Positions 37,288-59,647 of a DNA stretch of 64,000 nt are shown here, piece after piece; the stretch's first letter is position 1, and each line of letters starts with the position of its first letter. The position numbers and the translations under genes were made by a program. The notes under the pieces are model-generated. The model made no database searches and had not been told where the DNA came from. It saw nothing but the letters and a program-made list of their open reading frames with translations. The DNA lies in IMG/VR virus record IMGVR_UViG_3300013116_000108, positions 62,001 through 126,000 of that record, one strand, 5' to 3'.

Positions 37288-38295
37288 TTACTTCTGTTGA
37301 CGATCTCTAATCATTGCTAGAATATCATCTGCCTTTTTAGCAGAAGTTGTTTCAACAGGAGCCTCAGCCTTTGCTACTGGAGCCGGTGCTGGAGTACTAA
37401 CTTCTTCTGTTGTAGTTTCAGCAACTGGCTGTGTTGAAACAGCCGGAGCGGGAGACGGTGTTGCCGTAGTAGAAGTAGTTGTTTGTGTACTGCCTTGAGG
37501 AGCACTAACACCAGCCGGACGATAATAAGCACCAAATTTCTCGGTATCGTAAGGCTTGCCATCAACTGATTCCTCAAACATTTGTTTGATGATGTTAAGT
37601 TCAGTTTCTGACGGTTTCTTAGGTAAGAAGTCATTCAATGTAAACAACCCATGTGTGTCAATTGCTGTTTGTTCTTCAGCACTTAATGGAGTTTCTTTAC
37701 GAGCCCATTTAGATGTTGAATAATCAGCATAGCCACCTTTTGTGGTTTTTGTTACACGAAAATCTAGTCCAGCAGTTGAATCTGTTGGTAATTCGTCCAT
37801 TTCTGGATCCATTAAACTTGCTTTAATAATATTAAAGAGTTGTGGCCCCATAATAAAACGTCTGATTGGATTTTCTGGAGTTGAATCTTCAGTTAGAGGA
37901 TTTTCTCTAACAAATCCTTGGAAAACGTACGAACGTTTCTTCCAGTACTTACGACCCATGTCCTCTAGTGAGCTGTCTTTAAACCAAGGACGAACCTCAG
38001 TCAAGATTGGACATGAACCAACTGGTTCCCACATTTCCATACACGGAACTTGTACCGTACAAGGTTTGCTATTAACGTCGCCTTTAATACCTTGGAAAGG
38101 TAAACGAATCATTTGACGTTCTGCCCAGAAAAATGTATTACTAGAATCTCCATCAGGGAGAAACCTTAATGTAGTACTTTCGTTTTCTTGGATGTTCCAG
38201 TGAGGGAAGATAGCATTATCTCCTCCTGTGCTACTGCCTGATTGGCGTGTTTCTTGAGCTTGTAGCCTAGCTCGTATTTCCGCAAGTGATGCCAT
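37288..38295 (-). CDS. gp32: Single-stranded DNA-binding protein (T4 gp32-like)
   Basis: LRFLPD, CPIL, RKYWKKRSY, DFRVTK, YADYSTSKW, DDILAMIR tail. Confidence 0.9.
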   Translation of the reverse strand: MASLAEIRARLQAQETRQSGSSTGGDNAIFPHWNIQENESTTLRFLPDGDSSNTFFWAERQMIRLPFQGIKGDVNSKPCTVQVPCMEMWEPVGSCPILTEVRPWFKDSSLEDMGRKYWKKRSYVFQGFVRENPLTEDSTPENPIRRFIMGPQLFNIIKASLMDPEMDELPTDSTAGLDFRVTKTTKGGYADYSTSKWARKETPLSAEEQTAIDTHGLFTLNDFLPKKPSETELNIIKQMFEESVDGKPYDTEKFGAYYRPAGVSAPQGSTQTTTSTTATPSPAPAVSTQPVAETTTEEVSTPAPAPVAKAEAPVETTSAKKADDILAMIRDRQQK

Positions 38296-38473: not shown

Positions 38474-39067
38474 TTAAAGTTTTTTCCATTCTGAGTATAT
38501 TCTATCACTTTGGGCGTCCCATTTACACTCAAGTACTTCACAACCATATTTTTTAGCCCATTCATAATTAAGTTCAAATGTCCAAGGAAAAAACTGTATT
38601 TCTTCAACACCTTTCCAAGGATGATCTCCTATTCCTGGATTTTGTCGCCAATATAATATACCGCCCGGTTTTACTAGATCAACTGCTTTTTGAACTTGTG
38701 GTTCAACATCTTCTGCTGTGCCAAAATTCAAACTACCTAAAACAAATGCTATATCCCATTGTTTCCCATTTGCTTCAAATTCTTCAATTCCTACTACTTC
38801 GTCTGCTTTATCATTAGCAGGGTCAAAGCCATAAAGTCGGTCACCTAACTTTTCTTTAAATGAATTAAAACCACAACCAATATCAATTACTGTATCGTTA
38901 GGTCCTACTTTGTCTAATAATGCCCAGCCACTGTATTCATAGTGCTTATAATCTGGTTTCCAGTTACTACCAAAATATTTGTTTACTGTATTTTTGTCCA
39001 CTTGGTTTCCCTCCTTGTCTCGTTTCCATTTATGTTTAAAATAATGAACTACTGTTTTATTAACCAA
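38474..39067 (-). CDS. Class I SAM-dependent methyltransferase
   Basis: VIDIGCGFN, YGFDP, FVLGSLNFG, VKPGGILYWR. Confidence 0.85.
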   Translation of the reverse strand: MVNKTVVHYFKHKWKRDKEGNQVDKNTVNKYFGSNWKPDYKHYEYSGWALLDKVGPNDTVIDIGCGFNSFKEKLGDRLYGFDPANDKADEVVGIEEFEANGKQWDIAFVLGSLNFGTAEDVEPQVQKAVDLVKPGGILYWRQNPGIGDHPWKGVEEIQFFPWTFELNYEWAKKYGCEVLECKWDAQSDRIYSEWKKL

Positions 39068-40112
39068 TGTAATCCTCCAATTTTCCTTCTCTATATAAGT
39101 CTTGTGTTATACAATGTATTCCCCCGTCCCAAAAATACCTATGCCTAAAGTTAAATATTATAGGCTCTACTTTATGCTTTTTAAAGTGGTCAAACACTTC
39201 TTTGTTATAGTTGTTACATATAATTGTATTTTGATCAATAGATAACATATTAACATCAAAAACTGTTTCTTCTACATAGCCTACCCAATCCTTTAACCAC
39301 GTGTTGACAAATTCTATTAATTGATCGTTATGCTCTTCTCCTTTTAACCACCAGCGTCCTCCAACTTTCCATTTCATCTGTAAGAACGGATCAACTTTAG
39401 ACCACGATTGGTCTGGCAAATATAATACGTCCCATCCAGGAAATTGTGTTTTGTAGTCTTGTATATCTTTTAACGACACAATACATCCGGGCTTAACTAC
39501 ACAAAAACAACCATCGGAATGATATCCCCTATGTGATCTGTGTACTCTAAATCCTTCTTTGTTCCAGTTTTCAATTAACTCTTTTTCTAAATCAGGTGGA
39601 GCATTTTCGGCCCACCTTTCATGCGAGTCCCAAAATAAATCTTTACCAACTCTACAAATTTGTGCTGAACTTATAAATGGTGTATAACCTTCCCACGGTG
39701 TATCAAGTGTTTGCTCGGTTATGTATATGTCTTTTTTATCAACCTGATTAACAATGTCAATCATACCACCCTTGTTTAAGAACTCGTTTCTTTCACCTAC
39801 ATATAACTTTTCGCCAACAACACAAAAATGATCTCTTGGGGTCATTGGTGGGCGCCATACATCATTTAGTGATTTATATTTGCCGTCACCTTCAATGTTT
39901 AAAAAACTTCTATATGTTTTTACACCACAAGATTCTAGTATGTCAACTAATTTTAAAAAATCTTCTTCGGTTTCATCAGCAATACGTTTAAGGGGATCTA
40001 AAATTTTATTATTCTTAGGAAATAAATCTTCAAACCATTCTGCTTTAAATCCTGATCCGACCCAGCAATGCTTTAAAGGATCAAATGTAGAATATCCTTT
40101 AATTGGAATCAT
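39060..40112 (-). CDS. Amidinotransferase (glycine/inosamine-phosphate amidinotransferase family)
   Basis: YSTFDPLKHCWVG, PMTPRD, HSDG, GGIHCITQDLYR (Cys-His-Asp residues present). Confidence 0.85.
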   Translation of the reverse strand: MIPIKGYSTFDPLKHCWVGSGFKAEWFEDLFPKNNKILDPLKRIADETEEDFLKLVDILESCGVKTYRSFLNIEGDGKYKSLNDVWRPPMTPRDHFCVVGEKLYVGERNEFLNKGGMIDIVNQVDKKDIYITEQTLDTPWEGYTPFISSAQICRVGKDLFWDSHERWAENAPPDLEKELIENWNKEGFRVHRSHRGYHSDGCFCVVKPGCIVSLKDIQDYKTQFPGWDVLYLPDQSWSKVDPFLQMKWKVGGRWWLKGEEHNDQLIEFVNTWLKDWVGYVEETVFDVNMLSIDQNTIICNNYNKEVFDHFKKHKVEPIIFNFRHRYFWDGGIHCITQDLYREGKLEDYIG

Positions 40113-40707
40113 AGACTGCTATCCAAACATCTTTTTGAAATATAAAATCAGCATCAATGTTAAACTCGTTTCTAAGCCATTCACGACCTGGCTTTCGTAA
40201 TGTAAGATTATGTTTATAACAAAAATCTAATATTGCTTTATTTTGTTCTGTTATTTGATGATTCATAGTTGTATTATCTCTGTACCATTCATAACTAGGA
40301 TAACTAATATCCCAACCTCCTGCTTCATGCCACCAGTTGTAACATTCGTCGTCTGGCCTATAACACATTACAATTTTGCTATCAGGAAACGTTTCTTTTA
40401 TATTGTTTAGATAATAAGCAAAGTTATGACTTAGTATTAACTTAATATCGTCATCTTTACCTAAGTAACTTTGTGCTATTTCTTTTTGCCATAGGTTAAA
40501 CGACCCAAACTCCTTATCTAACCATTGTCCGTTAAGCATTCCAGGACCGTAGTAGTTTCCTATGTGTCCACTATACTTGTGATGTGTGTATGTTTTCTCA
40601 GGTACTAAATCTGTGTTGTCTACGTTAGTGCCGTGGTCTCTAATATGTTGACTTACACCACTCCAACGACTGCCAGGTGCTCCTGTAAAGAAAATCCAAT
40701 TTTTCAT
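40099..40707 (-). CDS. Sulfotransferase-like / P-loop fold protein
   Basis: FFTGAPGSRWSG, ILSH, KIVMCYRP. Confidence 0.45.
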   Translation of the reverse strand: MKNWIFFTGAPGSRWSGVSQHIRDHGTNVDNTDLVPEKTYTHHKYSGHIGNYYGPGMLNGQWLDKEFGSFNLWQKEIAQSYLGKDDDIKLILSHNFAYYLNNIKETFPDSKIVMCYRPDDECYNWWHEAGGWDISYPSYEWYRDNTTMNHQITEQNKAILDFCYKHNLTLRKPGREWLRNEFNIDADFIFQKDVWIAVYDSN

Positions 40708-41057
40708 GTGTATACACTTCCTATTATAAAGTAATCAACAACAAATGTCAACTCAGCACCTAAAAATACTGCTATCCAATAGTTGCCTATCCAATTCCAT
40801 AACTGCTTGATAACCCACCAAGCCATTAATACTCTTATTGAGTATAACACATCTGCCCATATGATGTCAAGCCATAGAAACGAATCTGCTTGAAAATAAT
40901 TGTAGAATACAAAGTTATCGTATATAAAACTTAATTGGGCCATAAAGAATACTGCCCAATAGTAAGTTAAATATTTGTTTAAAAATTTAACTAGTGGTCC
41001 TGAAACCACTAGTCGATATATGACATAGGTAAAGTTAGCGATTGCTAACTCAATCAT
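40704..41057 (-). CDS. Small integral membrane protein (3-4 TM)
   Basis: Hydrophobic, aromatic-rich 117-aa ORF. Confidence 0.65.
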   Translation of the reverse strand: MIELAIANFTYVIYRLVVSGPLVKFLNKYLTYYWAVFFMAQLSFIYDNFVFYNYFQADSFLWLDIIWADVLYSIRVLMAWWVIKQLWNWIGNYWIAVFLGAELTFVVDYFIIGSVYT

Positions 41058-41722
41058 TAGCTCACCTTAGTTTCGTCGTGTGGTAAACTACCATCGTTTA
41101 GTAAGCCATTTCGCTTACGTTTATCAAGCCAACTATGTTCAACACTATGTACATACTTGGCATTTGGATCTTTGTTTAGAATATAATGAAGTCTTTCATC
41201 TGTAGCATCTACAGGAATATTAAGCAAAGTGTCTAACGACTTTAAATATTGATGTCTAAACAAATACAGCAATTCTACACTTAAGAAAACGTGAGAATAT
41301 TCTATAATATCTTCAATCTTATTAAGAAAGTTGTGATAACTTTCTACACCTCTTTTTCTTAACTGTCCTTGTGCCATAATATTTTGATCTCTACCAATAA
41401 TGCCAACTTGAAGGTTTCCTACTTTGTTCAATTCACTTAATACTTCTTTGTAGTTAGGATAAACTGTTTGCTTTTGCCCGTCTATAATATCTACATATGG
41501 TCCACTTACACTAAGAACCCAGTTATTACTAGTAGACCAATCATAGTCTTTAATAGTTTCAGGCTTAGACCAAATATCTTTAAACGGTGCCGCATCGTGA
41601 TTTATCCAATACTCTCTTAACAGGTCATCCCAACCTGATACATCATCATGTAATGATAATGCTTTGGAATAAAGGTGATTACCGGACCCTTGAGGCCCGG
41701 TAATTACTAAAATGTTTGTCAT
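41057..41722 (-). CDS. Sulfotransferase-like / P-loop fold protein
   Basis: LVITGPQGSGNH, VGIIGRD. Confidence 0.45.
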   Translation of the reverse strand: MTNILVITGPQGSGNHLYSKALSLHDDVSGWDDLLREYWINHDAAPFKDIWSKPETIKDYDWSTSNNWVLSVSGPYVDIIDGQKQTVYPNYKEVLSELNKVGNLQVGIIGRDQNIMAQGQLRKRGVESYHNFLNKIEDIIEYSHVFLSVELLYLFRHQYLKSLDTLLNIPVDATDERLHYILNKDPNAKYVHSVEHSWLDKRKRNGLLNDGSLPHDETKVS

Positions 41723-42774
41723 TATTTCACTAACTTGTCTTTGTATACTGCTGGAATATTCAAAGCATCATTTGAAAACTTGATTAAATCTTTCAGTGAA
41801 TCTTCTGTAATGAACGACATCAACGTATCTCTTTGATTGTTGCCTGCTTCACCGATAATCCAATCATACTTTCCAACTTTCTTTTGGATAGCCTTGATTG
41901 CTTGAGGATCTTTAGACATCTCTAACAAAGCCGCCTGTAATTTCTCAGCATTAGGATTGCCTTTGTTTACCCAGAACGCTTTTTGTAAAGAGTCACGGAA
42001 TGATTTTACAAGTTTGTAAGCATCATACATTGGACCTGATGGAGCAACACCCCATTTTTCTTCAAATAAGATTTCCATTTGCTTTCCTGGATAGTTAGGA
42101 TCGTCAGCGTGTGATCCGTCTGCTTGTAGAATACCATGATGGAACCAAACTTCTGCTTCTTCATTAGGAGCAATATGCTTTTTAAATGCCGCAGGATTTT
42201 CTCTGTCAACAGTTAGTTCACCACGTTTAAATGCTAAACGTCTAGCACCACCGTTACCAAATCCTGGAACCCAGTTAACGTGTGATTTGAAACAAGCAGA
42301 ATATTCATCAATTGATTTGCCTGGGCCACATAATAACAATGCCATTCCCATAGCGTCAGGTACACGACCTGATTTTGAAGCAAAGATAATGTTTTCCATA
42401 TCAGCATCTAATCTCTTACCAACAATAATGTTTAAGTTCATCATGCCAATTGATTCCCAATCAGCATAGTTATAGTCAACATCTTCTTGTAAGAATGATA
42501 CACCATTACCACCATGCGATACCATAACAATAGTATCATCAAATCTTAGTTCGTTTTGAAAGGCGTTAACTGCAGGAATATCTCTAGCGCCTGGAAAGTT
42601 TCTAAGTTTTAGAGTGTCATTTGGTAAGAATCTTTGTAGTTCTTTGAGAACAATTTCTGTCCATACTGTTGTTCCTGAGCCCGGCTTTTGCGGTACAACA
42701 AACGTAAACGTTTCAGCAAATGCTGATCCTGTAATGCCTAGTGTTAGTACTAGTGCCATTAATAATTTTTTCAT
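41722..42774 (-). CDS. tctC: Tripartite tricarboxylate transporter substrate-binding protein (TctC/Bug-like)
   Basis: Signal peptide (...SAFA), FVVPQKPGSGT, NFPGA; tctA nearby. Confidence 0.7.
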   Translation of the reverse strand: MKKLLMALVLTLGITGSAFAETFTFVVPQKPGSGTTVWTEIVLKELQRFLPNDTLKLRNFPGARDIPAVNAFQNELRFDDTIVMVSHGGNGVSFLQEDVDYNYADWESIGMMNLNIIVGKRLDADMENIIFASKSGRVPDAMGMALLLCGPGKSIDEYSACFKSHVNWVPGFGNGGARRLAFKRGELTVDRENPAAFKKHIAPNEEAEVWFHHGILQADGSHADDPNYPGKQMEILFEEKWGVAPSGPMYDAYKLVKSFRDSLQKAFWVNKGNPNAEKLQAALLEMSKDPQAIKAIQKKVGKYDWIIGEAGNNQRDTLMSFITEDSLKDLIKFSNDALNIPAVYKDKLVK

Positions 42775-42893
42775 TTCTATTTTCCTTTTAATAATCAGAA
42801 TTATACAAGCGAAATGCTTGGATAATTATTTTGTTTTTGATTGTTTGCTACACTAAGAACCCTGACACTCGTCTAAGTTTGTGTATTGTGGAG

Positions 42894-42925
42894 TATAATA
42901 CAGCTCTGTATTACATTTTTATTTA
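42894..42925 (-). promoter_or_regulatory. Late promoter TAAATA and a 5' hairpin upstream of tctC
   Basis: TAAATA at 42925-42920, then TAATACA-GAGC-TGTATTA. Confidence 0.5.
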
Positions 42926-43611
42926 TCGTTTTTTCTTAGCACAAAATAATACCTGACTCCTCTGTCATTTACTTCTTGTTCGAGGGTTAAGATACTACAA
43001 TTTAAAGCACTAGCAGAATTAATAATAAACTCATTAGTCCAATTAAAAAATTCTATCCATTGTGCTTCAGGAGCCTTGTGCTGTTCTCCTGGATTAACTC
43101 TAAAATATAATAAACCGCTAGTCTTTGTTAAGTTTACAGCATTCTTTAATTCAGCATATATTTTATCTACAGTACCAAAATTAATGCTACCTAAACAAAT
43201 AGTAATATCATATTTTTCAGTTGGTTTGTATTCTAATATACTACTGTTAATATCTGCTCTTTCATTGTACGGATCTACACCAGTTAGGTTGTTGATCTTT
43301 CCTTTGAATTCATTATAGCCACAGCCTAAGTCTAAAACTCGTAAAGGCTTTAAGTTATTAACTTCATCTATAATACTTAATCCACTATACTTGTACTTTT
43401 TTGTAATAGGTTGCCAAACAGTAGCAAAGTATTTTTTAAGTACATGATAGTGGATAAGTTCTGTTAAATCTTTAACATTGGTAAAATTAATATCTTTAAT
43501 GTCAACACCAAAAGTTCCATTGATTGCCTGCTGTAAAAGTTTATTGTCATCTAATAGTTGTGGACTAGATTTAAACATAGTACACAGCCTGTCTAAAATT
43601 TTAGTGTTCAT
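42919..43611 (-). CDS. Class I SAM-dependent methyltransferase (paralog of 38474-39067)
   Basis: YKYSG, VLDLGCGYN, GVDP, ICLGSINFG, LLYFRVNPG. Confidence 0.85.
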   Translation of the reverse strand: MNTKILDRLCTMFKSSPQLLDDNKLLQQAINGTFGVDIKDINFTNVKDLTELIHYHVLKKYFATVWQPITKKYKYSGLSIIDEVNNLKPLRVLDLGCGYNEFKGKINNLTGVDPYNERADINSSILEYKPTEKYDITICLGSINFGTVDKIYAELKNAVNLTKTSGLLYFRVNPGEQHKAPEAQWIEFFNWTNEFIINSASALNCSILTLEQEVNDRGVRYYFVLRKNDK

Positions 43612-43618
43612 TAATTAC

Positions 43619-43942
43619 CTATAATGCTTTATGTAGTTGCTTAACTAGTTTATCTTTTGATAAACGTCTATCTAATTCAATACCTTTTTCTCTACCCATT
43701 TCTTCTAACTGTTTTTTAGTTAGTTTAGCAAGAGCTTTTTTTGTAGGTTTAGCAACAGTTTTTTTTGTTGCTGTAGCCTTAGGTGTTGCTTTAGGTTTTG
43801 CTGTAGCCTTAGGTGTTGCTTTTGCTTTAGGCTCTACTTTATATGCTACTGTTGGTGCCTTTTTTGGTTTGGCCGTTTCTTTTGCTTTTTCTTTACCAAA
43901 GAAAATTTCAGTTAGAGTAGGCCATCCTTTGAAAATACTCAT
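43619..43942 (-). CDS. Lys/Ala/Pro-rich histone-H1-like protein with C-terminal Rho-N/HeH-like motif
   Basis: PKAKATPKATAKPKATPKATA; LTKKQLEEMGREKGIELDRRLSKDKLV. Confidence 0.6.
   Translation of the reverse strand: MSIFKGWPTLTEIFFGKEKAKETAKPKKAPTVAYKVEPKAKATPKATAKPKATPKATATKKTVAKPTKKALAKLTKKQLEEMGREKGIELDRRLSKDKLVKQLHKAL
43768..43822. repeat. 25-bp direct repeat with 30-bp period encoding KATPKATA
   Basis: ttgctgtagccttaggtgttgcttt at 43768 and 43798. Confidence 0.9.
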
Positions 43943-43952
43943 TGTATTTCTC

Positions 43953-44660
43953 CTATATGTCTACCACATTATTAAAACTACCAAACTGTACTAGATCTCT
44001 TGTGAGGTCTGTAGTTAGTCCAGTAATTTGTAACATTGGCCTATTGTCCCAACCCATGTTACAAGTGGCGTGTGGTATATCCCGCCACTCCCATGTTATA
44101 CATTGTCCTTTACTCCATTGATGCCAGTTGCTATTACCTAATGAAAACACTTGTCCGTGTTTCCAATCATCTAACATAATAACAAACCTTCTCATAAGCT
44201 CAGGGTTCTTATCTGCTTCTATTTCTACAAAACTATTTCCGCGTTCTTTACGACCCGCAAAATTGTCTATATGCCAATTTAACATTTGTCCTGTTATTTG
44301 GTTATGAAACTTAATTGTTGCTTCTTCCATGCCAAAGTAATTAGCAATTTTTTTAAAAACTTCTATGTCTTCTGCCTTTGTTCTTTTGAATACTTCCATT
44401 TGCGGATTTGCTCCTGCTCTTTCTAAGTCGTATTCTTCTTGATTAGCACTATATATTCTATCTTTGCCATCAACTTTATTTCGTGTAGCCCATGTACTAG
44501 TTACTACTCTTTCTAAGCACTCGTTAACAGCATCTTCCCAATCACCATTAAACGTACAAACTTCTTGATAGTCTTTACTTACTACTTCTGGCCTAAAGTG
44601 CCATTTACTTTGTTTCTTTGTAAAATCCCAACGGCTTTTACCCCAGTCTTCGTTTGTCAT
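43953..44660 (-). CDS. 2OG-Fe(II) oxygenase-like protein
   Basis: KFHNQITGQMLNWHIDNF (HxD), PHATCN, RPMLQITG. Confidence 0.7.
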   Translation of the reverse strand: MTNEDWGKSRWDFTKKQSKWHFRPEVVSKDYQEVCTFNGDWEDAVNECLERVVTSTWATRNKVDGKDRIYSANQEEYDLERAGANPQMEVFKRTKAEDIEVFKKIANYFGMEEATIKFHNQITGQMLNWHIDNFAGRKERGNSFVEIEADKNPELMRRFVIMLDDWKHGQVFSLGNSNWHQWSKGQCITWEWRDIPHATCNMGWDNRPMLQITGLTTDLTRDLVQFGSFNNVVDI

Positions 44661-44672
44661 TTGCTATCCAAT

Positions 44673-44807
44673 CTATTTTATACTTCCGTTTAATACACGT
44701 TTACTATTAGGGTGCCTTTTTGCTGTAAACGTGGCGTGTGACATATTCTTTTTAATTCTTGGGACACCTTTTTTTACTATAATGCCCGGTACTGCTCTTT
44801 TTCCCAT
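44673..44807 (-). CDS. 44-aa highly basic peptide (absent from the ORF track)
   Basis: MGKRAVPGIIVKKGVPRIKKNMSHATFTAKRHPNSKRVLNGSIK*; TAATG overlap with the tctA stop. Confidence 0.65.
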   Translation of the reverse strand: MGKRAVPGIIVKKGVPRIKKNMSHATFTAKRHPNSKRVLNGSIK

Positions 44808-46246
44808 TATGAATACTCCAATTTATTTTTTCTAGAAACACCGTACACAAACAAGCCTACAATCAGTACACACAATACTAAAAAGATAGGTCTTTGTAAT
44901 AATTTATCAAAAGTATAAATGTGTATTAAGTTTAATGTCAGCGATTCAAATTTAGTAGCAAGTATAAATGCCATAAGCATACCTGGTCTACTAAATTTAT
45001 ACTTTTTACAAACAACACCTAGCACCGAACATATTGCTAATATGGCATAGTCTTCCCAACCGCCTGTATATTGTACACAGGCCCAAATTATAAATGCTAC
45101 AATTAAAGGGAAATAATATATGTAAGGCACATAACAGATCTTAGCAATGTATCTATTAAATGTTATACAGATAATACCAACTAATACTGTTGCCCACATA
45201 AAGCCAAATGTTAGACTATCAAAAAACTTTGTGTCGTAAGCAATTTCTTGAGCACCTAGTTCAAACCCTAAGTACATAAACAGTCCCATAAGAACTGCGG
45301 CAAAACTTGCCCCTGGTATACCAAACAATACTGTTGGAATCATACTAGTTGCTTTTTGTGAGTTGTTAGCACCTTCTGGTCCTACTACTCCTCTAATATT
45401 ACCTTTGCCAAATTCTTCGTTAGGATGAGTTGCTACTGTTGAACCATATGCCATCCAGTCTGCCATAGCACCGCCAATGCCTGGTAAGAATCCTATAAAG
45501 GCTCCAATGGCTCCGCCACGTAGGGCGTCCCATTTCATTTTCCATACTACTTTAATACCTTCCCAAGTTTGCTTCATTTGAGTATTTTCTTTCATATGAG
45601 CTACTTGTTGGCCTTTCTTCCAGCCATCTAATATTTCTGGAAAAGCAAATAGTCCAGCAACAAAAGGCATAAGTTGTACACCGTCGCCTAAGTATTCCCA
45701 ACCGCCTGTGTATCTATCAAAGTTTGTTAATGGATCTGTACCTATAAGTCCTATTCCTAGTCCTACAAGAATTGCTATAATACTTCTAAACCAAAATCTG
45801 TTACTAACAAATCCTACACAGGCAAGAGCCATTACCATGAATGCCCATAACTCTGGAATGCCAAAGTACATAATAAGTTGTACATACCAAGGCAATAAAG
45901 CAAAGGTTAGTGTACCCCATATAAGTCCGTTAAGTGTTGAAGTTGTAATTGCGGCCGTTAAAGCATAAGTGGCTTTACCTTGTTTTGCTAACGGGTATCC
46001 GTCAACCATAGTTGCCGCGGCTGAATTGGCGCCTGGTATTCCTAATAATATTCCCGAGTATGTGTCGCCTGTTGTACTGGCGGCTACTACTGCCATACAA
46101 AATATTACGCCTAAGTAAGGATCAAATCCAAAGTAACTGATAAATCCAAATAAGGCTACTAATCCTGTTGTTGCTCCAGCACTAGGTACTAGACCTACAA
46201 TCAAACCATAAAATGTACCTGCTAATAAAGTGTAAATTTCTTCCAT
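44807..46246 (-). CDS. tctA: Tripartite tricarboxylate transporter large permease TctA
   Basis: GILLGIPGANSAAATMVDGYPLAKQGKA, GFLPGIGG, GVVGPEGANN, PTVLFGIPG; about 12 TM. Confidence 0.92.
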   Translation of the reverse strand: MEEIYTLLAGTFYGLIVGLVPSAGATTGLVALFGFISYFGFDPYLGVIFCMAVVAASTTGDTYSGILLGIPGANSAAATMVDGYPLAKQGKATYALTAAITTSTLNGLIWGTLTFALLPWYVQLIMYFGIPELWAFMVMALACVGFVSNRFWFRSIIAILVGLGIGLIGTDPLTNFDRYTGGWEYLGDGVQLMPFVAGLFAFPEILDGWKKGQQVAHMKENTQMKQTWEGIKVVWKMKWDALRGGAIGAFIGFLPGIGGAMADWMAYGSTVATHPNEEFGKGNIRGVVGPEGANNSQKATSMIPTVLFGIPGASFAAVLMGLFMYLGFELGAQEIAYDTKFFDSLTFGFMWATVLVGIICITFNRYIAKICYVPYIYYFPLIVAFIIWACVQYTGGWEDYAILAICSVLGVVCKKYKFSRPGMLMAFILATKFESLTLNLIHIYTFDKLLQRPIFLVLCVLIVGLFVYGVSRKNKLEYS

Positions 46247-46310: not shown

Positions 46311-48539
46311 TTACTGAGTTGTTTTTCTTTTGTGAATAGATCTAGGAGTAGTTTGGTGTTCGTTTTTCTTAGGTCTTAATGCTTTGTTAGATGACATAAC
46401 ACCTGCTAACTTTTTCATATGATTGATAGACTCATCGGCGTCATCTTTTTCATCTTCAATCTCATCTTCAAGTTCTTTAGCAAGAGCGTCTGCCATTCCT
46501 TTTTTAAGAACTTCTTCTGGGTTTTTTGATTCATTAATATCTACACCAAAAGGAGCATCGCCAAAGAAATCTTCTAGTCTGCTTTGAACAATGTGTCTAA
46601 CGTCAAGTACGTCACCGCCATCTTCTGCACTATCTAGATCATCTAATAACTCATCATCAAATACAAAACCAGTTACCATGTTAGTTGTTTCTTCGCCTGG
46701 TGGACGAGGTTTAGACATAAACTCTTTGTATCTCGCTACAGCGTCTTCATGTTCGCCTTCTGGTTGACCATCATATTTCATTAGTCCGCCAATCATAGTA
46801 CCTTCAGCAACTTTTTTTGCTTCAATTTCTTCAACCGCCGCTTCGGCTTCAATTGGTAATTCTTTTGAATCATCTACTGCTTCATTTTTCATAGCCATCA
46901 TTTGATCCATATGTGTTTGGTAAGGTTGTCCATATTCTTTCATACCTGCTAACCAATTCCATATAGTAGGCCTAGCATCAGCATTAGGGTCAAGTTCACT
47001 TAATTGGTCATATAACTCATCATCACCAAATATTTCACCAATTTCATCTGTTGCGGCTTGACCTTCTTCGCCTGCTATAACAGGTGTTGACATAATTTCT
47101 TTAAACCTTGCTACATGTTCATCGCTTGATGGTAAATGCCACGTGCCTTCTTTTACAACTGAATCTGTCCATTTTTTAAATTCTGCTGATTCTTCTTGTG
47201 GCTTCATTTTATATTTAGGATCAAAGTCTTGTACTTCTACATCACCTTTAAGCCACTTACTAGCAATAGCAATCGCCATTTCTTTATCATGCTTATTATT
47301 AAAACTGTCATCAATATTAAAAATTGCTCTTGCTAAATCATCGTCTTTTGTACGAACTGAAATTGTTGCTAAGATTCTTCTAACTAAAGCATGTAATGGG
47401 TTTTCTGTATGATCTAAGCCTTGTGAATCGTTTGGCTTTTTAAACTTGTTTGCTTTAACAAAGGCAAGTTGCTTTTTAATTAAAGCATCTTCTTCTTCGT
47501 TTGGTGTTACAACAATTTTCTTTTTACCTTGAATAATATCATGAATTGGGCCCATGTCTTCGTGTACTTTTCTTCTTGCTTTAAGTACTGTAGGTAACAA
47601 ACTTTCTAGTTCTGTTTGATCAACTGTTCTAACTAATTGACTCTTTAGTTCGTTAATGTCTGATTCGTCATATACTGATTCTGTAGGCTGAAAGTTTTCA
47701 GCATAAGTCTTATAACCTTTTGGTTTTGAAAGAGTGTTAACTGTTGCTTTCAAACCTTGGTAACGTTTCTTAGCATCAGAAATAATATCAGCAGAATCTT
47801 CGTTAACAAACCCGTCAGCACGATTTAATTTTTTAACAAAGTTTCTTAATTCATACATTTCTTTAACACATTCAATAATGTGAGAACCTAGTTCGTCATG
47901 TGGATTGCCTCCTGCATGAACATGTCTTGCCATTGCTCTAGCACCTGGTAAATATTTGAAAGGAAATTTAAATCTTTCCTTGGCACTATTCTCAATAAAG
48001 ACTGATTGTATTTGTCTACTTCTAGATCCCATTTTATCTTCATCTACTGCTGATCTGTGTTTTATAATTAACCTTGCTGACTCAACTGTTTGGTAACTTG
48101 TTTTAGTTGAACCATATAATTTGCTGACTGATTCCATTGTAATTTCATCCGTTGTATATTGAGAACTATTTTTAGTAATAGCCTCATAATCTCGTTTGTC
48201 TAACTGATTTTTGCCTATGTTTCTTACATCAAAATTCATCATGTTTTTCTTAGCAAACATTCTCATTTCTTTTAAGAAATCAAACCAACTACGTTGTATT
48301 GAATCTGGTAAGTCACCGCTCAAACTTTCAGCAAAATAAATTGTAAAGTTAGCAGGATCAATAATACTAATTGTTACAGGTCCGTACTTTTCTCCTTCAA
48401 CAACATAGTTAAAATCAAACAATCTTGCTTGTTCTGACTCTAATACAGCACCTGCACCTTCATCTGCTATGTTTACTTCACCAAATTTACTGGCTAAATT
48501 TTGATATAATGTGTCGGCTATTTTTTTAATCAGTTCCAT
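46311..48539 (-). CDS. Large modular late protein, probably head/internal
   Basis: 742 aa; leaderless late promoter; next to the terminase; acidic modules. Confidence 0.55.
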   Translation of the reverse strand: MELIKKIADTLYQNLASKFGEVNIADEGAGAVLESEQARLFDFNYVVEGEKYGPVTISIIDPANFTIYFAESLSGDLPDSIQRSWFDFLKEMRMFAKKNMMNFDVRNIGKNQLDKRDYEAITKNSSQYTTDEITMESVSKLYGSTKTSYQTVESARLIIKHRSAVDEDKMGSRSRQIQSVFIENSAKERFKFPFKYLPGARAMARHVHAGGNPHDELGSHIIECVKEMYELRNFVKKLNRADGFVNEDSADIISDAKKRYQGLKATVNTLSKPKGYKTYAENFQPTESVYDESDINELKSQLVRTVDQTELESLLPTVLKARRKVHEDMGPIHDIIQGKKKIVVTPNEEEDALIKKQLAFVKANKFKKPNDSQGLDHTENPLHALVRRILATISVRTKDDDLARAIFNIDDSFNNKHDKEMAIAIASKWLKGDVEVQDFDPKYKMKPQEESAEFKKWTDSVVKEGTWHLPSSDEHVARFKEIMSTPVIAGEEGQAATDEIGEIFGDDELYDQLSELDPNADARPTIWNWLAGMKEYGQPYQTHMDQMMAMKNEAVDDSKELPIEAEAAVEEIEAKKVAEGTMIGGLMKYDGQPEGEHEDAVARYKEFMSKPRPPGEETTNMVTGFVFDDELLDDLDSAEDGGDVLDVRHIVQSRLEDFFGDAPFGVDINESKNPEEVLKKGMADALAKELEDEIEDEKDDADESINHMKKLAGVMSSNKALRPKKNEHQTTPRSIHKRKTTQ

Positions 48540-48554: not shown

Positions 48555-50132
48555 TTAAATGATTACAAACGGCATAGGCTCTATATAGTCGTCTTCAGTT
48601 GATCTCATGTCTTGTTGAATTTTTGGGTCGTATGTACCTAAAAATGTTGCTATTCTTAATGCTAGTACCGTTGCCATAACTAAATCATCATGCTCACCCG
48701 GCTTACCTTGATAACTATTGCCACTTGCTACAAAAGTTTTTAATTGTGTTATAAGAGGTTTACTATACACTACCAGTTTTTGATTTTCTACTAGTTCTTT
48801 TAACTTGGCACAAGAAGCCAATTTACTTTTGTGTGTTGTATTAAATCCTTTTCTAAAGCGCCTAACGTGTCCACTCCTAGCAGGTTCACTCATAAAATAT
48901 CCATGAATTGCTTCTTCCCCTACTTCTGCTATAGAAACAAGTGCGGCTTCACCTAATGTGTTGTTCTCTACACTATAATAAATGTTATTATTGTCATTTG
49001 TAATACCATAAATGTATTTTGTAATTTGCTTTAATATTGTAATTTGTTCTTGTATTGTAGTTTTATTATGTTGCCATTCAGCACATTGTTTCATACCAGG
49101 CAATTCAAAAACTTGTATGGCTGAATAGTCGCCTCCTGTTCCTAAACTAGGATCTAAACCTACAACATACGTTTTTCCTTTTTTAGGTTTATGATACCAA
49201 CGAACTTGACCTTGTTTATATAAAGGGTCATTGCCTTCTAAACTTGCTAATATAATAGGGTTAATTAATGTTTCATCAAATATGATTGGTTCACATTCGT
49301 GTTCACGTTTGAATCGTTCAATGCCAATCCTTCCGCGTTCTTCGTCTGCCCAATCTTTATCTCTATCAGGATGTTCACTCCATAGTGCCTTAAAGGCATG
49401 AAAGCCATTAACACCTACACCGCCTTCGTTTTCATTACCAAAGTTGTCTAATGTTTTATTTGCTTCTGTCCATAATAACCAAAACTGATCTTCGTCTGAG
49501 TTAGGTGTTGAAGTAATAATCGCTTTACCACCTGTTGCTAGTGTAGGTGATATCGATGTCCAAAACTCTGTAGCAATGTTATTCCTCACAAAAGCAAACT
49601 CATCACAGTATAGCATTGTAATGGACATACCTCTTCCTGTGTTTTCTGTAGTTGCTTGTGATACAATTCTACTACCATTCTCAAATTCTATCGATCCTCT
49701 GTTGTAATTTGTAACACCTGCTCTAATAAAATCAGGACAAAGTTCATATCCGTATCTAACACGTTGCATAATTTCTTGAGCGCCGGCGTGTTTATGTGCC
49801 GCAACTAGTATTACACTATCAGGAACAAACATAGCATACCAAAGCAAGTATCCAGCCGCTGTGGTAGTTTTACCCATTTGTCTGCTTACTAAGTTAATAC
49901 TAAATCTGTTTTTATGGTAACTGTCTAGTAATGTTTCTTGGAAATCATAAGGATCGTATTTAATTTTACCTTGTGTAGGATGTTGTATAAAGAAATAATG
50001 TTCAAGAAAGTACGTTGGCCCAGATACTGGATCAGCACACTTCATAAATTCTTCAAGTTGCTCTTCAGTAAACTGCTGGCCTTTATTGGCTTTTTTGATT
50101 AATACACCATCTAGTGATTTATTAGTAGACAT
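48555..50132 (-). CDS. terL: Terminase large subunit (T4 gp17-like)
   Basis: SRQMGKTT, YCDEFAF, ITSTPN, VGLDPSLG, HDDLVMA. Confidence 0.95.
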   Translation of the reverse strand: MSTNKSLDGVLIKKANKGQQFTEEQLEEFMKCADPVSGPTYFLEHYFFIQHPTQGKIKYDPYDFQETLLDSYHKNRFSINLVSRQMGKTTTAAGYLLWYAMFVPDSVILVAAHKHAGAQEIMQRVRYGYELCPDFIRAGVTNYNRGSIEFENGSRIVSQATTENTGRGMSITMLYCDEFAFVRNNIATEFWTSISPTLATGGKAIITSTPNSDEDQFWLLWTEANKTLDNFGNENEGGVGVNGFHAFKALWSEHPDRDKDWADEERGRIGIERFKREHECEPIIFDETLINPIILASLEGNDPLYKQGQVRWYHKPKKGKTYVVGLDPSLGTGGDYSAIQVFELPGMKQCAEWQHNKTTIQEQITILKQITKYIYGITNDNNNIYYSVENNTLGEAALVSIAEVGEEAIHGYFMSEPARSGHVRRFRKGFNTTHKSKLASCAKLKELVENQKLVVYSKPLITQLKTFVASGNSYQGKPGEHDDLVMATVLALRIATFLGTYDPKIQQDMRSTEDDYIEPMPFVII

Positions 50133-50200: not shown

Positions 50201-51580
50201 TTAATCTCTGTTGTCGTATGCTTTTTTAAGTTTCATAACTAAATCGTTATGTCCTTGGTTACCAACAGCCGGCATAGCCTTTGGTCTGTTAATTCCGCCT
50301 GACATTTTGTTAAGTTGTGTATCAGCGTCAGCATATTCTTCATCTGGTGAGTTAGAATATTCTTCAACTTGGTTAATATCTGCGTCTGTTACAACTTTTA
50401 GTCCTGCTAATTTTAAAAGTTGCTGTAAAGTGCCAGTTTCTGAATCTTCAGATGTTGCTTCGTTAAAAACTATATCGTAAGCACCATGCATTGTTTCTTC
50501 TTCATCGTCGCCCATGATATCAATAAATTCTTGTTTCATAGCATCTGTAATTGGTAATGGATCTACTTCATAATTTAGATCTAATTCGCTTTGTTCAATT
50601 CCATCAGTAGTAACACCACTGTCTAAAGAAGCCTTGAACCAACCTTGAGGTAATGGATCACCGTTGCCTCCTTTATACTTAGACCATTTATTAACCCATG
50701 CTTTAAGTCTTTCATCAGTACTTTCAGTTACTGATCCTTCACTTGTTGGAGCACCCATTTTTGCTTGACGAATTAACATTTCTAGCCCTTCTTGGTCCAT
50801 AGTTTTTTCTACTTCATCACCCGAATACTTGTCTTGTGTATCGTCCATGACACCCATTTCTGCTTTATGTTCTTTGCCATTTTCATCTTTAACAATATAT
50901 GTATATTCGCCTACTCTCTTATATGATAGTTTACCATTATATGTGTCGCCATCAATTTCATCTGGTGGTGTTATCCATTTACCATCATCTGATTCACCAA
51001 GTTTTGATAACTTTTGCTGTAATGCTGTCATTTCACTTGAACGTTCAATGCTATAAGCCTTATTGCTGTCACCAGCGTCTCTGGCATCTTTTGCCATTTG
51101 CATTAGTTTTTGAATTCGTGCTTTAACTTTTTCTTTATCATTAGGAACATTAAGTTCGCTTATTTGTTCTTCATCTAAATCGCCTTCTCTTACTGGAGCA
51201 CCCATTTTTGCTTGACGAATTAGCATCGCTAATCCTTCTTGGTCCATGGTTTTTTCTACTTCATCGCCTGAATAGTTGTCTTGTGTATCGTCCATGACAC
51301 CCATTTCTGCTTTGTATTCTTTGCCATTTTCATCTTTAACGATATATGTGTATTCACCTATTCTCTTGTATGTTAGTTTACCGTTATATGTGTTGCCATC
51401 AATTTCATCTGGTGCTTTTTTCCAATTAGCATCAAGTTCATTAACGCTTTGTTCCATTTCTTTTATTGTTTTTTTAAATTCTGATTCTTTGTTTGCTTCT
51501 TCTTTAGCGAATTCTTCGGTTTGTATTTCTCTAAAAAGTCCCGCAACTTTGTGTAAATCAATTAGTTTATTGTCGCTCAT
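50201..51580 (-). CDS. Acidic modular late protein with an internal ~75-aa duplication
   Basis: Two copies of PDEIDG.TYNGKL.YKR.GEYTYIVKDENGKE.KAEMGVMDDTQD.YSGDEVEKTMDQEGL.MLIRQAKMGAP. Confidence 0.6.
   Translation of the reverse strand: MSDNKLIDLHKVAGLFREIQTEEFAKEEANKESEFKKTIKEMEQSVNELDANWKKAPDEIDGNTYNGKLTYKRIGEYTYIVKDENGKEYKAEMGVMDDTQDNYSGDEVEKTMDQEGLAMLIRQAKMGAPVREGDLDEEQISELNVPNDKEKVKARIQKLMQMAKDARDAGDSNKAYSIERSSEMTALQQKLSKLGESDDGKWITPPDEIDGDTYNGKLSYKRVGEYTYIVKDENGKEHKAEMGVMDDTQDKYSGDEVEKTMDQEGLEMLIRQAKMGAPTSEGSVTESTDERLKAWVNKWSKYKGGNGDPLPQGWFKASLDSGVTTDGIEQSELDLNYEVDPLPITDAMKQEFIDIMGDDEEETMHGAYDIVFNEATSEDSETGTLQQLLKLAGLKVVTDADINQVEEYSNSPDEEYADADTQLNKMSGGINRPKAMPAVGNQGHNDLVMKLKKAYDNRD
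50748..51414. repeat. ~220-bp direct repeat (50748-50967 and 51195-51414)
   Basis: Near-identical copies offset by 447 nt. Confidence 0.9.
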
Positions 51581-52132
51581 TTATTTTCTCCCTGCCACTG
51601 GTGATGTTGTACCTTGTGGCAAATCACTAGTTGTTTTTGCTTTTTCTGTTTTACCTCCAGCAATTTCTACCTCAGGTGTTTCTTTTTGTAATTCTTTAAG
51701 AAAGCCTAATTTCGCTTCTGCTGGTGCTTCGCCCGAAGCATAATCTGAACCAAGATTTGGAATATAATCTTCGCCTTGAGTTTTTACAAACTCTTCTCTA
51801 GCAACTTCTTCTGGATGATCACTGTTAATAACAACTACGTGGTTACCAGGAAGACCTGCTAAATTTACTAAATCACTATGTACAACTTGCGGTGTACTAG
51901 GATATGTCAATGTAATTTCAAAAATAGAAACTTCGCTATTGCGAAGATTTTGAAAATCCATTGGATGTTCTTGAATTGGTGTTGTTTTAGGAGATGTAAT
52001 ATCCTTAACATCATACTTGCCTAATACTCTTTCAATAACGTCCATTAATTCTGGCTCGGCTTTCATGGCCAATTTAACCTTGAATTTATATTCTTTTACT
52101 GACTCTGCCAAGTATTCATTAAATAATTTCAT
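51581..52132 (-). CDS. Hypothetical protein, probably virion-associated
   Basis: GGAG RBS before MKLFNEYLAES at 52132; TAAATA at 52156-52161. Confidence 0.6.
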   Translation of the reverse strand: MKLFNEYLAESVKEYKFKVKLAMKAEPELMDVIERVLGKYDVKDITSPKTTPIQEHPMDFQNLRNSEVSIFEITLTYPSTPQVVHSDLVNLAGLPGNHVVVINSDHPEEVAREEFVKTQGEDYIPNLGSDYASGEAPAEAKLGFLKELQKETPEVEIAGGKTEKAKTTSDLPQGTTSPVAGRK

Positions 52133-52154
52133 TTTACTCTCCATTGTATTATAA

Positions 52155-52664
52155 CTATTTATTATCTTTTGTGTCATTTTTGTTGAGTATTCTATCGAGT
52201 AATTCATTGCGACTTAATACTGTTGCTTCGCCATTTTCGGCACCATCTATTTTGCCCATATCCCTGTCAATCCTAGCATCAAGGGCCTTCTTTCGCAGTT
52301 GTAATTCAACCATTTTTAATTTTTTATCTATTTTTGCCTGCTTGGCATTAAGTTTAATTTGAAGCATTTTACTTGCTGTATCAAATATTTGTCCACTAAA
52401 CCTTGCTTCAACATTCATACCTAAATCCATTAAGTTATCAAATGTATCATCAGCCTTGGTGGCTATTTCGTCCATTTCTTTATCATTCGCTGTTAAATTT
52501 TCAACGCCTGCTAGAGCAGATTCAATATTATCTACTTCTTCTAATTCTTTTTCTACTTTATCAACTACTTCAATTGCCTTTGACGGCTCAACTTCTTCAG
52601 GGAGTTCTTCTGTACTATCGTCTAAAGGTGCGATATTAAGTAGTTCTTCTAATTTTTTTGTCAT
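52155..52664 (-). CDS. Probable terminase small subunit (gp16-like)
   Basis: Helical oligomerisation-type core, SRNELL tail, packaging-gene context. Confidence 0.55.
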   Translation of the reverse strand: MTKKLEELLNIAPLDDSTEELPEEVEPSKAIEVVDKVEKELEEVDNIESALAGVENLTANDKEMDEIATKADDTFDNLMDLGMNVEARFSGQIFDTASKMLQIKLNAKQAKIDKKLKMVELQLRKKALDARIDRDMGKIDGAENGEATVLSRNELLDRILNKNDTKDNK

Positions 52665-54619: not shown

Positions 54620-54623
54620 TTAA

Positions 54624-55250: not shown

Positions 55251-55301
55251 AATATGTCTCCTTTATTATTAATACAATATTATTTATCTTATCAACTGAC
55301 C

Positions 55302-55330
55302 AAAAAAATAGGGCGGTTTAAACGCCCTAT
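55302..55330 (-). terminator. Rho-independent terminator after the sheath gene
   Basis: ATAGGGCG/CGCCCTAT stem with 7 T; TAAATA at 55281-55286 restarts transcription. Confidence 0.8.
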
Positions 55331-55350
55331 TTCAATGTTTTTGTTAATTA

Positions 55351-59617: not shown

Positions 59618-59647
59618 ATTATACTACAAAGTCTTAGGCATTGTCAA
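59618..59647 (-). promoter_or_regulatory. sigma70 promoter; leaderless
   Basis: TTGACA, 18 nt, TATAAT, acaagt, ATG (59611). Confidence 0.8.

What the first reader, a model, noticed from the sequence alone, without database searches (positions are those of the whole stretch)
40704..46246. Split tripartite tricarboxylate transporter with no recognisable TctB
Seen in sequence: tctA (44807-46246) and tctC (41722-42774) are separated by four genes, and tctC has its own late-type promoter. Established: TTT systems need TctA, TctB and TctC. Inference: the 117-aa membrane protein (40704-41057) may be a divergent TctB, or the phage borrows host TctB. A phage-coded secondary transporter would change nutrient uptake in infected cells.
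Basis: partly seen in the sequence, partly recalled or inferred. Interest (0 to 1): 0.6.

Follow-up and report, generated by a model that had tools for sequence, protein, structure and literature searches.

The report
Phage two-gene tricarboxylate-type transporter module
An uncultivated marine jumbo phage carries a real TctA membrane transporter and a very divergent TctC-type binding protein, a pair that hundreds of related phages keep as adjacent genes without any recognisable TctB; the 117-aa membrane protein is a new phage-only family tied to TctC-type genes but shows no detectable homology to TctB.

Summary

The two genes are separated by three real genes plus one doubtful 44-aa ORF. The split is secondary: in about 70 related viral loci tctA sits directly upstream of the binding-protein gene, often overlapping it by 4 bp. 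The "late promoter" is not supported.

No TctB was found in the 204-kb record, which is 56% complete. None was found in a complete 328-kb relative that carries two TctA/binding-protein pairs. Another relative does carry a canonical tctB-tctA, so TctB is recognisable when present.

The 117-aa protein is a conserved four-helix protein with an internal repeat, found only in phages. It shows no profile similarity to TctB and its fold leans weakly towards GtrA. In 32 of 39 informative loci it follows a TctC-type gene, from either of two sequence families. Most TctA/binding-protein loci lack it.

Verdict: a phage-specific two-gene TTT core; the 117-aa protein is a plausible but unproven small subunit.

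The parts
44807..46246 (-). tctA, 479 aa, about 12 TM, large TTT membrane subunit
   Evidence: PF01970 E 1.1e-97 over the full model. The G-x3-G-x3-G-x2-P-x-x-G motif is present in TM1 (G10..G24) and TM7 (G244..G258) and invariant in 35 homologues. 12 hydrophobic segments. dN/dS 0.03-0.16.
44673..44807 (-).
   Evidence: The frame is kept in L008, L009 and L024 at 76-98% identity. No TM segment.
43953..44660 (-). 235-aa soluble protein with an HxD...H pattern, probably a cupin / 2OG-Fe(II) oxygenase; often lies between tctA and the binding-protein gene in relatives
   Evidence: No Pfam hit. The nearest named Atlas cluster carries PF05118 Asp_Arg_Hydrox, score 0.96. Synteny in L002-L006, L019, L025, L026 and L035.
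43619..43942 (-). 107-aa lysine-rich protein with a conserved C-terminal motif; an insertion between tctA and the binding-protein gene
   Evidence: Weak PHROG hits only, E about 2e-4. Present in L024, L036, L038 and L039.
42919..43611 (-). 230-aa class I SAM methyltransferase-like gene; lies upstream of tctA in most relatives and between the two genes here
   Evidence: PF13489, E 4e-4, below the cut-off. Synteny.
42775..42918 (-). Conserved 144-nt leader upstream of the binding-protein gene with three predicted hairpins
   Evidence: An 85-nt block is nearly invariant in 5 loci; 28 predicted pairs, 6 with compensatory changes. No Rfam family. The TATAAT is not conserved.
41722..42774 (-). Divergent TctC/Bug-fold periplasmic solute-binding protein, 350 aa, Sec signal peptide (residues 1-20, ...SAFA/E)
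41057..41722 (-). 221-aa P-loop protein (kinase- or sulfotransferase-like); overlaps both neighbours by 1 nt
   Evidence: Walker-A-like GPQGSGNH near the N-terminus. No significant family hit. Travels with this binding-protein type in L011-L013 and L018.
40704..41057 (-). 117-aa four-helix membrane protein with an internal 2+2 repeat; phage-restricted family; candidate small subunit
   Evidence: AF2 pLDDT 90.5, helices 2-26, 32-55, 62-90 and 93-113. The two halves are 35% identical, E 9e-6. Invariant R15/R75, Q41, D47/D108; the Q41 counterpart in the second half, E102, is Glu or Gln. Only 20 clusters in 1.84 billion representatives. dN/dS 0.07-0.15. Neighbourhood.
40099..40707 (-). 202-aa P-loop sulfotransferase-like protein; 4-nt overlap with the 117-aa gene
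   Evidence: PF13469, E 0.04 only. Syntenic downstream of the 117-aa gene or of the binding-protein gene in many loci.
39060..40112 (-). 350-aa amidinotransferase-like enzyme (C-terminal GG-x-HC motif)
   Evidence: phmmer against PDB: HsvA 1.3e-4, SxtG 2.9e-4, AGAT 1.2e-3, C-terminal 65 residues only. phrog_25854, E 3e-11.
38474..39067 (-). 197-aa second methyltransferase-like paralogue at the end of the tightly packed gene run
   Evidence: 35-40% identical to the 230-aa methyltransferase-like genes in the loci. No Pfam hit.

Best explanation
The region holds a phage-specific, essentially two-gene TTT-type uptake module.

Shown:
- tctA is a full-length TctA under purifying selection.
- The gene at 41722-42774 encodes a secreted, highly divergent TctC/Bug-fold binding protein.
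- Across related uncultivated jumbo phages (the SSB is 58% identical to that of the Pseudomonas phage PA5oct group) the two genes are ancestrally adjacent and often overlap.
- In this lineage three genes were inserted or moved between them, and the binding-protein gene together with the 221-aa gene appears to have been swapped in from another cassette.
- No canonical TctB is coded in the available 204 kb. None is coded in a complete 328-kb relative with two TctA/binding-protein pairs.

Inferred mechanism:
- During infection the binding protein is exported by Sec to the periplasm of a Gram-negative host.
- There it captures a carboxylate-type solute and delivers it to phage TctA, which carries out ion-coupled uptake.
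- This works either without a small subunit or with the host's.
- The flanking methyltransferase-like, P-loop, cupin-oxygenase-like and amidinotransferase-like genes, which travel with the pair, may process the solute.

The 117-aa protein is shown to be a conserved, phage-only, internally duplicated four-helix membrane protein. It usually sits right after a TctC-type gene. I infer that it is an optional small subunit without detectable homology to TctB, standing in the tctB position. I put about 40% on that sub-claim.
For: - TctA.
- Binding-protein fold and remote homology; weak sub-threshold BugD and 6hke hits.
- Adjacency of tctA and the binding-protein gene in about 70 of 80 IMG/VR loci, many with a 4-bp overlap. 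In all, 425 viral contigs carry the binding protein.
- Only 5 MAG contigs among 185,579 species genomes carry it, and all have the same phage cassette genes.
- Phage identity of the window: T4-type terminase, virion protein, SSB like PA5oct, virus record.
- No TctB. The complete relative G306 has 2 TctA, no TctB, no 117-aa homologue and no PF03401.
- TctB is detectable in phage when present (G307).
- 117-aa gene neighbourhood: 24 loci with this binding-protein type, and 8 loci directly after or near a canonical PF03401 TctC (E 1e-20 to 2e-29), making 32 of 39 informative loci in three gene orders.
- Purifying selection on all three genes.
- Mosaic ancestry: the binding protein is 89% identical to L011 but 67% to L019, whereas TctA is 77% and 84%.
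Against: - No transport or binding assay exists and the substrate is unknown.
- The record is 56% complete, so a canonical tctB (as in G307) could lie in the missing part.
- About three quarters of TctA/binding-protein loci lack the 117-aa gene within 8 kb. A complete genome lacks it altogether. It is therefore not required by the pair.
- Seven 117-aa loci have neither TctA nor a binding protein within 8 kb.
- Five contigs of 56-126 kb with canonical TctC plus the 117-aa gene have no TctA.
- There is no profile similarity to TctB.
- The fold searches lean weakly towards GtrA/DPMS-type four-helix domains rather than TctB.
Confidence: 0.6

Rival explanations
1. The 117-aa protein has nothing to do with transport by TctA. 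It is a GtrA-like small membrane protein, for example handling a lipid-linked intermediate or anchoring enzymes. It belongs to the flanking cluster of methyltransferase-like, P-loop, oxygenase-like, radical SAM and carbamoyltransferase genes, and its adjacency to binding-protein genes is cassette synteny.
For: - Atlas shape search: 4 of the top 6 rows are PF04138 GtrA_DPMS_TM, TM 0.58-0.66 over 112-117 residues.
- Its stop overlaps the next enzyme gene.
- Seven loci carry it beside a radical SAM gene without any TTT gene.
- It is absent from most TctA/binding-protein loci.
Against: - No Pfam GtrA hit at E<=10, and hhalign to a GtrA alignment gives 0.66%.
- The fold scores lie in the range that unrelated helical bundles reach (notes).
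- No glycosyltransferase was seen next to it.
- 32 of 39 loci place it after a TctC-type gene of two different families and in three gene orders. Synteny alone explains that poorly.
Confidence: 0.3
2. The phage pair depends on the host's TctB ('borrowing'), or in loci with only a binding protein plus the 117-aa gene, on host TctA. The phage supplies only the parts that set specificity or abundance.
For: - A complete phage genome has two TctA/binding-protein pairs and no small subunit.
- Contigs with canonical TctC plus the 117-aa gene have no TctA.
- Orphan TctC genes that use shared membrane parts are common in bacteria (PMC5812351).
Against: - The host is unknown, so its TTT content is untested.
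- The phage TctA is only 30-33% identical to the best cellular TctA in 301 sampled genomes, so a fit to a host TctB is not obvious.
- The contigs are 16-35% complete.
Confidence: 0.25
3. The split means the two genes no longer work together here: the binding protein is an orphan used for another purpose, or tctA is a decaying passenger gene.
For: Three genes and two intergenic spacers of about 145 nt separate them. The binding-protein gene and tctA have different ancestries.
Against: - Both are intact and under purifying selection: dN/dS 0.03-0.21.
- The TctA motifs are invariant.
- Every close relative with the split keeps both genes.
- The pair is adjacent in about 70 other loci.
Confidence: 0.08

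Closest known systems
Bacterial tripartite tricarboxylate transporters (TctCBA of Salmonella, BctCBA of Bordetella; TC 2.A.80)
   Same: A full-length TctA with the duplicated glycine-rich motif. A secreted binding protein with the TctC/Bug fold. The two genes are adjacent in most relatives.
   Different: No TctB gene. The binding protein escapes PF03401 and NCBIfam models. TctA is only 30-33% identical to the sampled cellular TctA. Gene order is tctA then the binding-protein gene, instead of tctC-tctB-tctA. The module is coded by phages and embedded in a cluster of modifying enzymes.
Archaeal and orphan bacterial TctA without TctB or TctC (Winnen et al. 2003, as reviewed in PMC5812351)
   Same: TctA is present without a recognisable TctB.
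   Different: Here a dedicated binding protein is kept next to TctA, so the system is binding-protein dependent by design.
Fused TctA-TctB proteins of bacteria
   Same: The best cellular matches to the phage TctA (32-33% identity, about 230-250 bits) include open frames of 625-708 aa. In G132 the same 683-aa frame also holds a TctB domain behind TctA; TctA-TctB fusions also occur at other loci (G116, G002).
   Different: The phage TctA stops at 479 aa and has no TctB domain.
GtrA / DPMS transmembrane domain family (PF04138)
   Same: The 117-aa protein has the same size, four helices as two hairpins, and an internal duplication. These are the best shape matches.
   Different: No sequence or profile similarity. 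No glycosyltransferase partner was seen. It is linked to TctC-type genes instead.
Viral tctA noted as an auxiliary metabolic gene (SUP05 viruses, PMC4164917; OMZ myovirus scaffold, PMC8115048)
   Same: tctA or 'tricarboxylate transport' genes on marine viral contigs.
   Different: Those papers report a domain hit only. They do not analyse partners, binding proteins or TctB.

Membership tests
TTT large subunit TctA (PF01970) | Full-length match to the family model above the curated cut-off | tested here: met
   327.8 bits against a 28.9 cut-off, model positions 3-421 of 423; the same in six frames.
TTT large subunit TctA (PF01970) | Duplicated G-Hy3-G-Hy3-G-Hy2-P-G-Hy-G motif in TM1 and TM7 (PMC5812351) | tested here: met
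   G10, G14, G18, P21, G24 and G244/245, G248, G252, P255, G256, G258 are all invariant in 35 homologues. The TM1 copy reads P-S-A-G.
TTT large subunit TctA (PF01970) | About 12 transmembrane helices | tested here: met
   12 hydrophobic segments by a crude hydropathy scan. No dedicated topology predictor was run.
TTT binding protein TctC/Bug (PF03401) | Match to the family's sequence model | tested here: not met
   No hit at E<=10. No NCBIfam hit. None of the 120 listed homologues carries a Pfam domain.
TTT binding protein TctC/Bug (PF03401) | TctC/Bug type II periplasmic binding fold, closer to TTT binding proteins than to other binding-protein classes | tested here: met
TTT binding protein TctC/Bug (PF03401) | Remote sequence homology to bona fide TctC | tested here: met
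   hhalign of A1 against five phage TctC that pass PF03401 gives probability 94.8%, E 5e-8. It covers only the N-terminal 104 columns, signal peptide included.
TTT binding protein TctC/Bug (PF03401) | Secreted, and encoded next to tctA | tested here: met
   Signal peptide seen in the sequence. Adjacent to tctA in about 70 related loci, though not in this window.
TTT binding protein TctC/Bug (PF03401) | Binds a carboxylate ligand | not testable with these tools
   Needs a ligand screen with purified protein.
TTT small subunit TctB (PF07331), for the 117-aa protein | Sequence or profile similarity to TctB | tested here: not met
   No Pfam hit at E<=10. hhalign of A2 against 23 cellular TctB domains gives probability 0.7%. 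TctB is poorly conserved, so this is weak evidence against.
TTT small subunit TctB (PF07331), for the 117-aa protein | Small protein with 4-5 TM helices | tested here: met
   Four helices, pLDDT 90.5.
TTT small subunit TctB (PF07331), for the 117-aa protein | Gene linked to tctC and tctA | tested here: inconclusive
   32 of 39 informative loci have a TctC-type gene upstream. Most TctA/binding-protein loci lack it. A complete genome lacks it. Eight loci have it with TctC but no TctA.
TTT small subunit TctB (PF07331), for the 117-aa protein | Physical complex with TctA | tested here: inconclusive
   The complex prediction gave no verdict. This counts neither for nor against.
GtrA/DPMS TM family (PF04138), for the 117-aa protein | Sequence or profile similarity | tested here: not met
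   No Pfam hit. hhalign of A2 against 27 GtrA domains gives 0.66%.
GtrA/DPMS TM family (PF04138), for the 117-aa protein | Four-helix, two-hairpin fold | tested here: inconclusive

The most novel reading that the evidence does not exclude
The 117-aa family is a phage-invented small TTT subunit with no detectable homology to TctB. Together with a phage binding protein, of either the divergent or the canonical TctC type, it docks onto TctA. In phages that carry only the binding protein and this gene, it would retarget the host's own TctA to a solute the phage needs. Phages would then have a minimal, modular kit (binding protein +/- small subunit +/- TctA) for rewiring secondary uptake in infected marine bacteria.
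Probability: 0.25. Interest if true: 0.75.

Novelty: new variant of a known kind. Interest (0 to 1): 0.55.

Why it matters
Phage auxiliary genes for nutrient uptake are mostly single binding proteins such as PstS. Here a complete secondary-transporter core, a membrane carrier plus a dedicated periplasmic receptor, is widespread in uncultivated jumbo phages: 425 viral contigs carry the receptor. It has diverged so far that standard annotation misses the receptor.

The case bears on an old open question in the TTT field, namely what TctB does and whether it is needed. Nature offers TctA/receptor pairs with no TctB in a complete genome. It also offers a new four-helix protein that stands in the tctB position in some lineages. 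Both can be tested directly by heterologous expression.

The linked enzyme genes and the exchange of receptor alleles between cassettes suggest that phages tune which solute infected cells import.

Tried and rejected
- Complex prediction of TctA (alignment A3) with the 117-aa protein (A2): score 0.00, verdict 'no answer'. It is no evidence either way.
- hhalign of the 117-aa family against TctB (0.7%) and against GtrA (0.66%): neither membership is supported.
- Foldseek PDB search with the 117-aa model: nothing at E<=0.001.
- Exhaustive profile search of 1.84 billion representatives with A2, used because the claim rests on absence of relatives: only 20 small clusters, none with a known function. 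Feature search in the Atlas found only the protein's own viral cluster.
- Search for another small multi-TM gene near TctA/binding-protein pairs in loci without the 117-aa gene: no recurrent family.
- Whole-record hydropathy scan: the only other small multi-TM gene is a DUF6580 protein next to a TonB-dependent receptor, not TctB.
- Cultured phages: megablast of the region and tblastn of the binding protein found nothing. TctA gave only 7 records below 33% identity: six unannotated, mostly short records and one Salmonella genome scaffold.
- No solved TctA structure exists to compare with.
- Rfam on the leader: nothing.
- One search listed an unpublished genome (G044).
- The idea that the contig is cellular was rejected: terminase, virion protein and SSB are present, it is a virus record, and the cassette occurs on 425 viral contigs.

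Full report
**Setting.** The window is bases 62001-126000 of a 204.1-kb IMG/VR virus record that CheckV rates 56% complete. It is a tailed phage. A T4-type large terminase lies at 48555-50132 and a virion structural protein at 46311-48539. An SSB at 37288-38295 is 58% identical to that of the Pseudomonas jumbo phage PA5oct group. GC is about 34%. All genes of the finding lie on the minus strand and exist at the stated coordinates.

**The large subunit.**
- The 479-aa product of 44807-46246 matches PF01970 (TctA) over the whole model, E 1.1e-97.
- It has about 12 hydrophobic segments.
- It carries the duplicated glycine-rich motif that the TTT review describes for TM1 and TM7. All motif residues are invariant in 35 homologues.
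- dN/dS against relatives is 0.03-0.16.
- There is no solved TctA structure to compare with.

**The 'tctC'.**
- The 350-aa product of 41722-42774 starts with a Sec-type signal peptide.
- It has no Pfam hit even at E<=10, no NCBIfam hit and no PHROG hit.
- More than 1,500 homologues exist, and none of the 120 listed carries a Pfam domain.
- An AF2 model built on 49 of them is confident: pLDDT 89.9, pTM 0.86.
- Its 16 best Foldseek matches in the PDB are all TTT binding proteins: BugE, MatC, terephthalate-binding proteins, a Polaromonas TctC, BugD, Bug27 and AdpC.
- A profile of the family aligns to five phage proteins that do pass PF03401, with 94.8% probability (E 5e-8) over the N-terminal 104 columns.

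**The 'split'.**
- Between the two genes lie three genes of at least 100 aa: a 235-aa soluble protein, a 107-aa lysine-rich protein and a 230-aa methyltransferase-like protein.
- There is also a 44-aa basic ORF that overlaps the tctA stop and is kept only in close relatives.
- A scan of IMG/VR found 425 viral contigs with a relative of the binding protein.
- In the 80 loci fetched, tctA lies directly upstream of it wherever the sequence reaches that far, often with a 4-bp overlap.
- The window's arrangement is confined to its closest relatives. Intermediate forms exist: tctA-235-binding protein, tctA-107-binding protein and tctA-235-methyltransferase-binding protein.
- The binding-protein gene and the following 221-aa gene are most similar to those of one group (L011: 89% and 90%). 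TctA and the 117-aa gene are closer to another group (L019: 84% and 91%, against a binding protein at 67%). The receptor was therefore probably exchanged between cassettes.
- Only five contigs among one genome each of 185,579 species carry the receptor. All are MAG contigs with the same phage cassette genes.
- The nearest cellular TctA in 301 sampled genomes is 30-33% identical.

**The promoter.**
- Upstream of the binding-protein gene there is a TATAAT, not the T4 late TATAAATA.
- It is not conserved in the four relatives that share this spacer.
- Sigma-70-like matches in the region are at the level of shuffled sequence.
- What is conserved is an 85-nt block and three predicted hairpins, some with compensatory changes. 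Only five sequences support this, and no Rfam family matches.

**TctB.**
- No PF07331 match at E<=10 exists in six frames of the 204-kb record.
- A relative with direct terminal repeats, rated 100% complete (G306, 328 kb), has two TctA genes. Each is followed by a signal-peptide protein of 320-350 aa. G306 has no TctB, no canonical TctC and no 117-aa homologue.
- Another relative (G307) has a canonical tctB (148 aa, E 1.3e-17) overlapping a second, canonical tctA (503 aa). This lies 45 kb from its pair of the window's type.
- Hence TctB is recognisable in these phages when present. The pair of the window's type is encoded without one. The missing 44% of this record could still hold one.
- The review states that TctB is poorly conserved, of unknown function, absent from archaea and possibly accessory. 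'TTT systems need all three' is therefore too strong.

**The 117-aa protein.**
- It is modelled with confidence as four helices (pLDDT 90.5).
- It is an internal duplication of a two-helix unit: the halves are 35% identical, E 9e-6. Arg and Asp are invariant at equivalent places in both halves; Gln41 is invariant and its second-half counterpart (E102) is Glu or Gln.
- It is under strong purifying selection (dN/dS 0.07-0.15).
- The family is tiny and viral: 46 clusters at 90% identity, and 20 representatives in an exhaustive profile search of 1.84 billion proteins, all at most 119 aa.
- It shows no profile similarity to 23 cellular TctB domains (0.7%) nor to 27 GtrA domains (0.66%).

**Neighbourhood of the 117-aa gene.** A scan with its own alignment gave 43 viral loci.
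- 24 have the window's type of binding protein upstream, with TctA wherever the sequence reaches, in the orders tctA-receptor-117 or receptor-tctA-117.
- 8 have a canonical PF03401 TctC upstream, 3 nt away in three of them, and no TctA within 8 kb. No TctA was found anywhere on five such contigs of 56-126 kb.
- 7 have neither gene and lie beside a radical SAM gene.
- 4 are cut off.
- Conversely, about three quarters of the receptor loci lack the 117-aa gene within 8 kb. No other small membrane gene recurs there.
- I read this as a real functional tie to TctC-type receptors, in the place where tctB stands in tctCBA operons, but not as a requirement of the TctA/receptor pair.
- The rival reading, that it belongs to the surrounding enzyme cluster, is not excluded.
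- The complex prediction gave no verdict and is listed only among the things tried.

**Conclusion.**
- The finding is real in its core and ordinary in its parts, but unusual in its make-up.
- It is a phage-specific, bipartite TTT module: TctA plus a divergent TctC-fold receptor. The module is widespread in uncultivated jumbo phages, rearranged in this lineage, and accompanied in some lineages by a new four-helix protein that may stand in for TctB.
- The literature held here mentions viral tctA only as a domain hit.
- Substrate, host and the role of the small protein remain to be tested.

Noticed in passing
window 59624-61866 (minus strand): A phage-coded TonB-dependent receptor (588 aa, Plug plus beta-barrel, E 5e-23) is followed by a 160-aa six-TM DUF6580 protein (E 9e-38) and a dNMP kinase-like gene. 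This is a second putative uptake module in the same phage. Relative G307 also has a Plug-domain receptor near its canonical tctB-tctA.
   Followed up: partly
window 42775-42918: The spacer upstream of the binding-protein gene holds an 85-nt block that is nearly invariant in five loci, and three predicted hairpins with some compensatory changes. No Rfam family matches. It could be a leader RNA, a processing site or a terminator/antiterminator.
   Followed up: partly
window 39060-40112; paralogues in G000 at 23523-24707, 51211-52251, 54411-55652: An amidinotransferase-like enzyme whose C-terminus resembles HsvA, SxtG and AGAT. There are at least three distant paralogues (27-31% identity to a common homologue) in the record.
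   Followed up: partly
window 38474-44660 and loci L087-L131: The TctA/receptor pair travels with a recurring set of methyltransferase-like, P-loop sulfotransferase-like, cupin/2OG-oxygenase-like and P-loop kinase-like genes. In relatives the set also includes carbamoyltransferase, class I glutamine amidotransferase and radical SAM genes. This looks like a small-molecule modification cluster of unknown product.
   Followed up: partly
L209:8986-10919 (G307) and L210:3172-5687 (G306): Relatives carry further TTT genes. G307 has a canonical tctB-tctA without a canonical tctC. G306 has a second TctA followed by another unrecognised 320-aa signal-peptide protein and three tandem cupin-like paralogues.
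   Followed up: partly
window 44673-44807: A 44-aa very basic ORF overlaps the tctA stop codon (TAATG). Its frame is kept in L008, L009 and L024. It may be a small gene or a chance frame.
   Followed up: partly
proteins P0179-P0187: Proteins of 52-88 aa match only one half of the 117-aa profile. They may be single-hairpin relatives that would have to pair up, or fragments.
   Followed up: no
L002 (285-kb ENA contig), positions 1-2260: A related large contig codes ClpX, IF3, ribosomal protein S21 and ClpS close to its TctA/receptor pair.
   Followed up: no
window 40704-46246 versus L009: Neighbouring genes differ greatly in divergence from the same relative (dS 0.18 for tctA, 0.32 for the receptor, 0.64 for the 117-aa gene). 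This indicates recombination within the cassette.
   Followed up: partly
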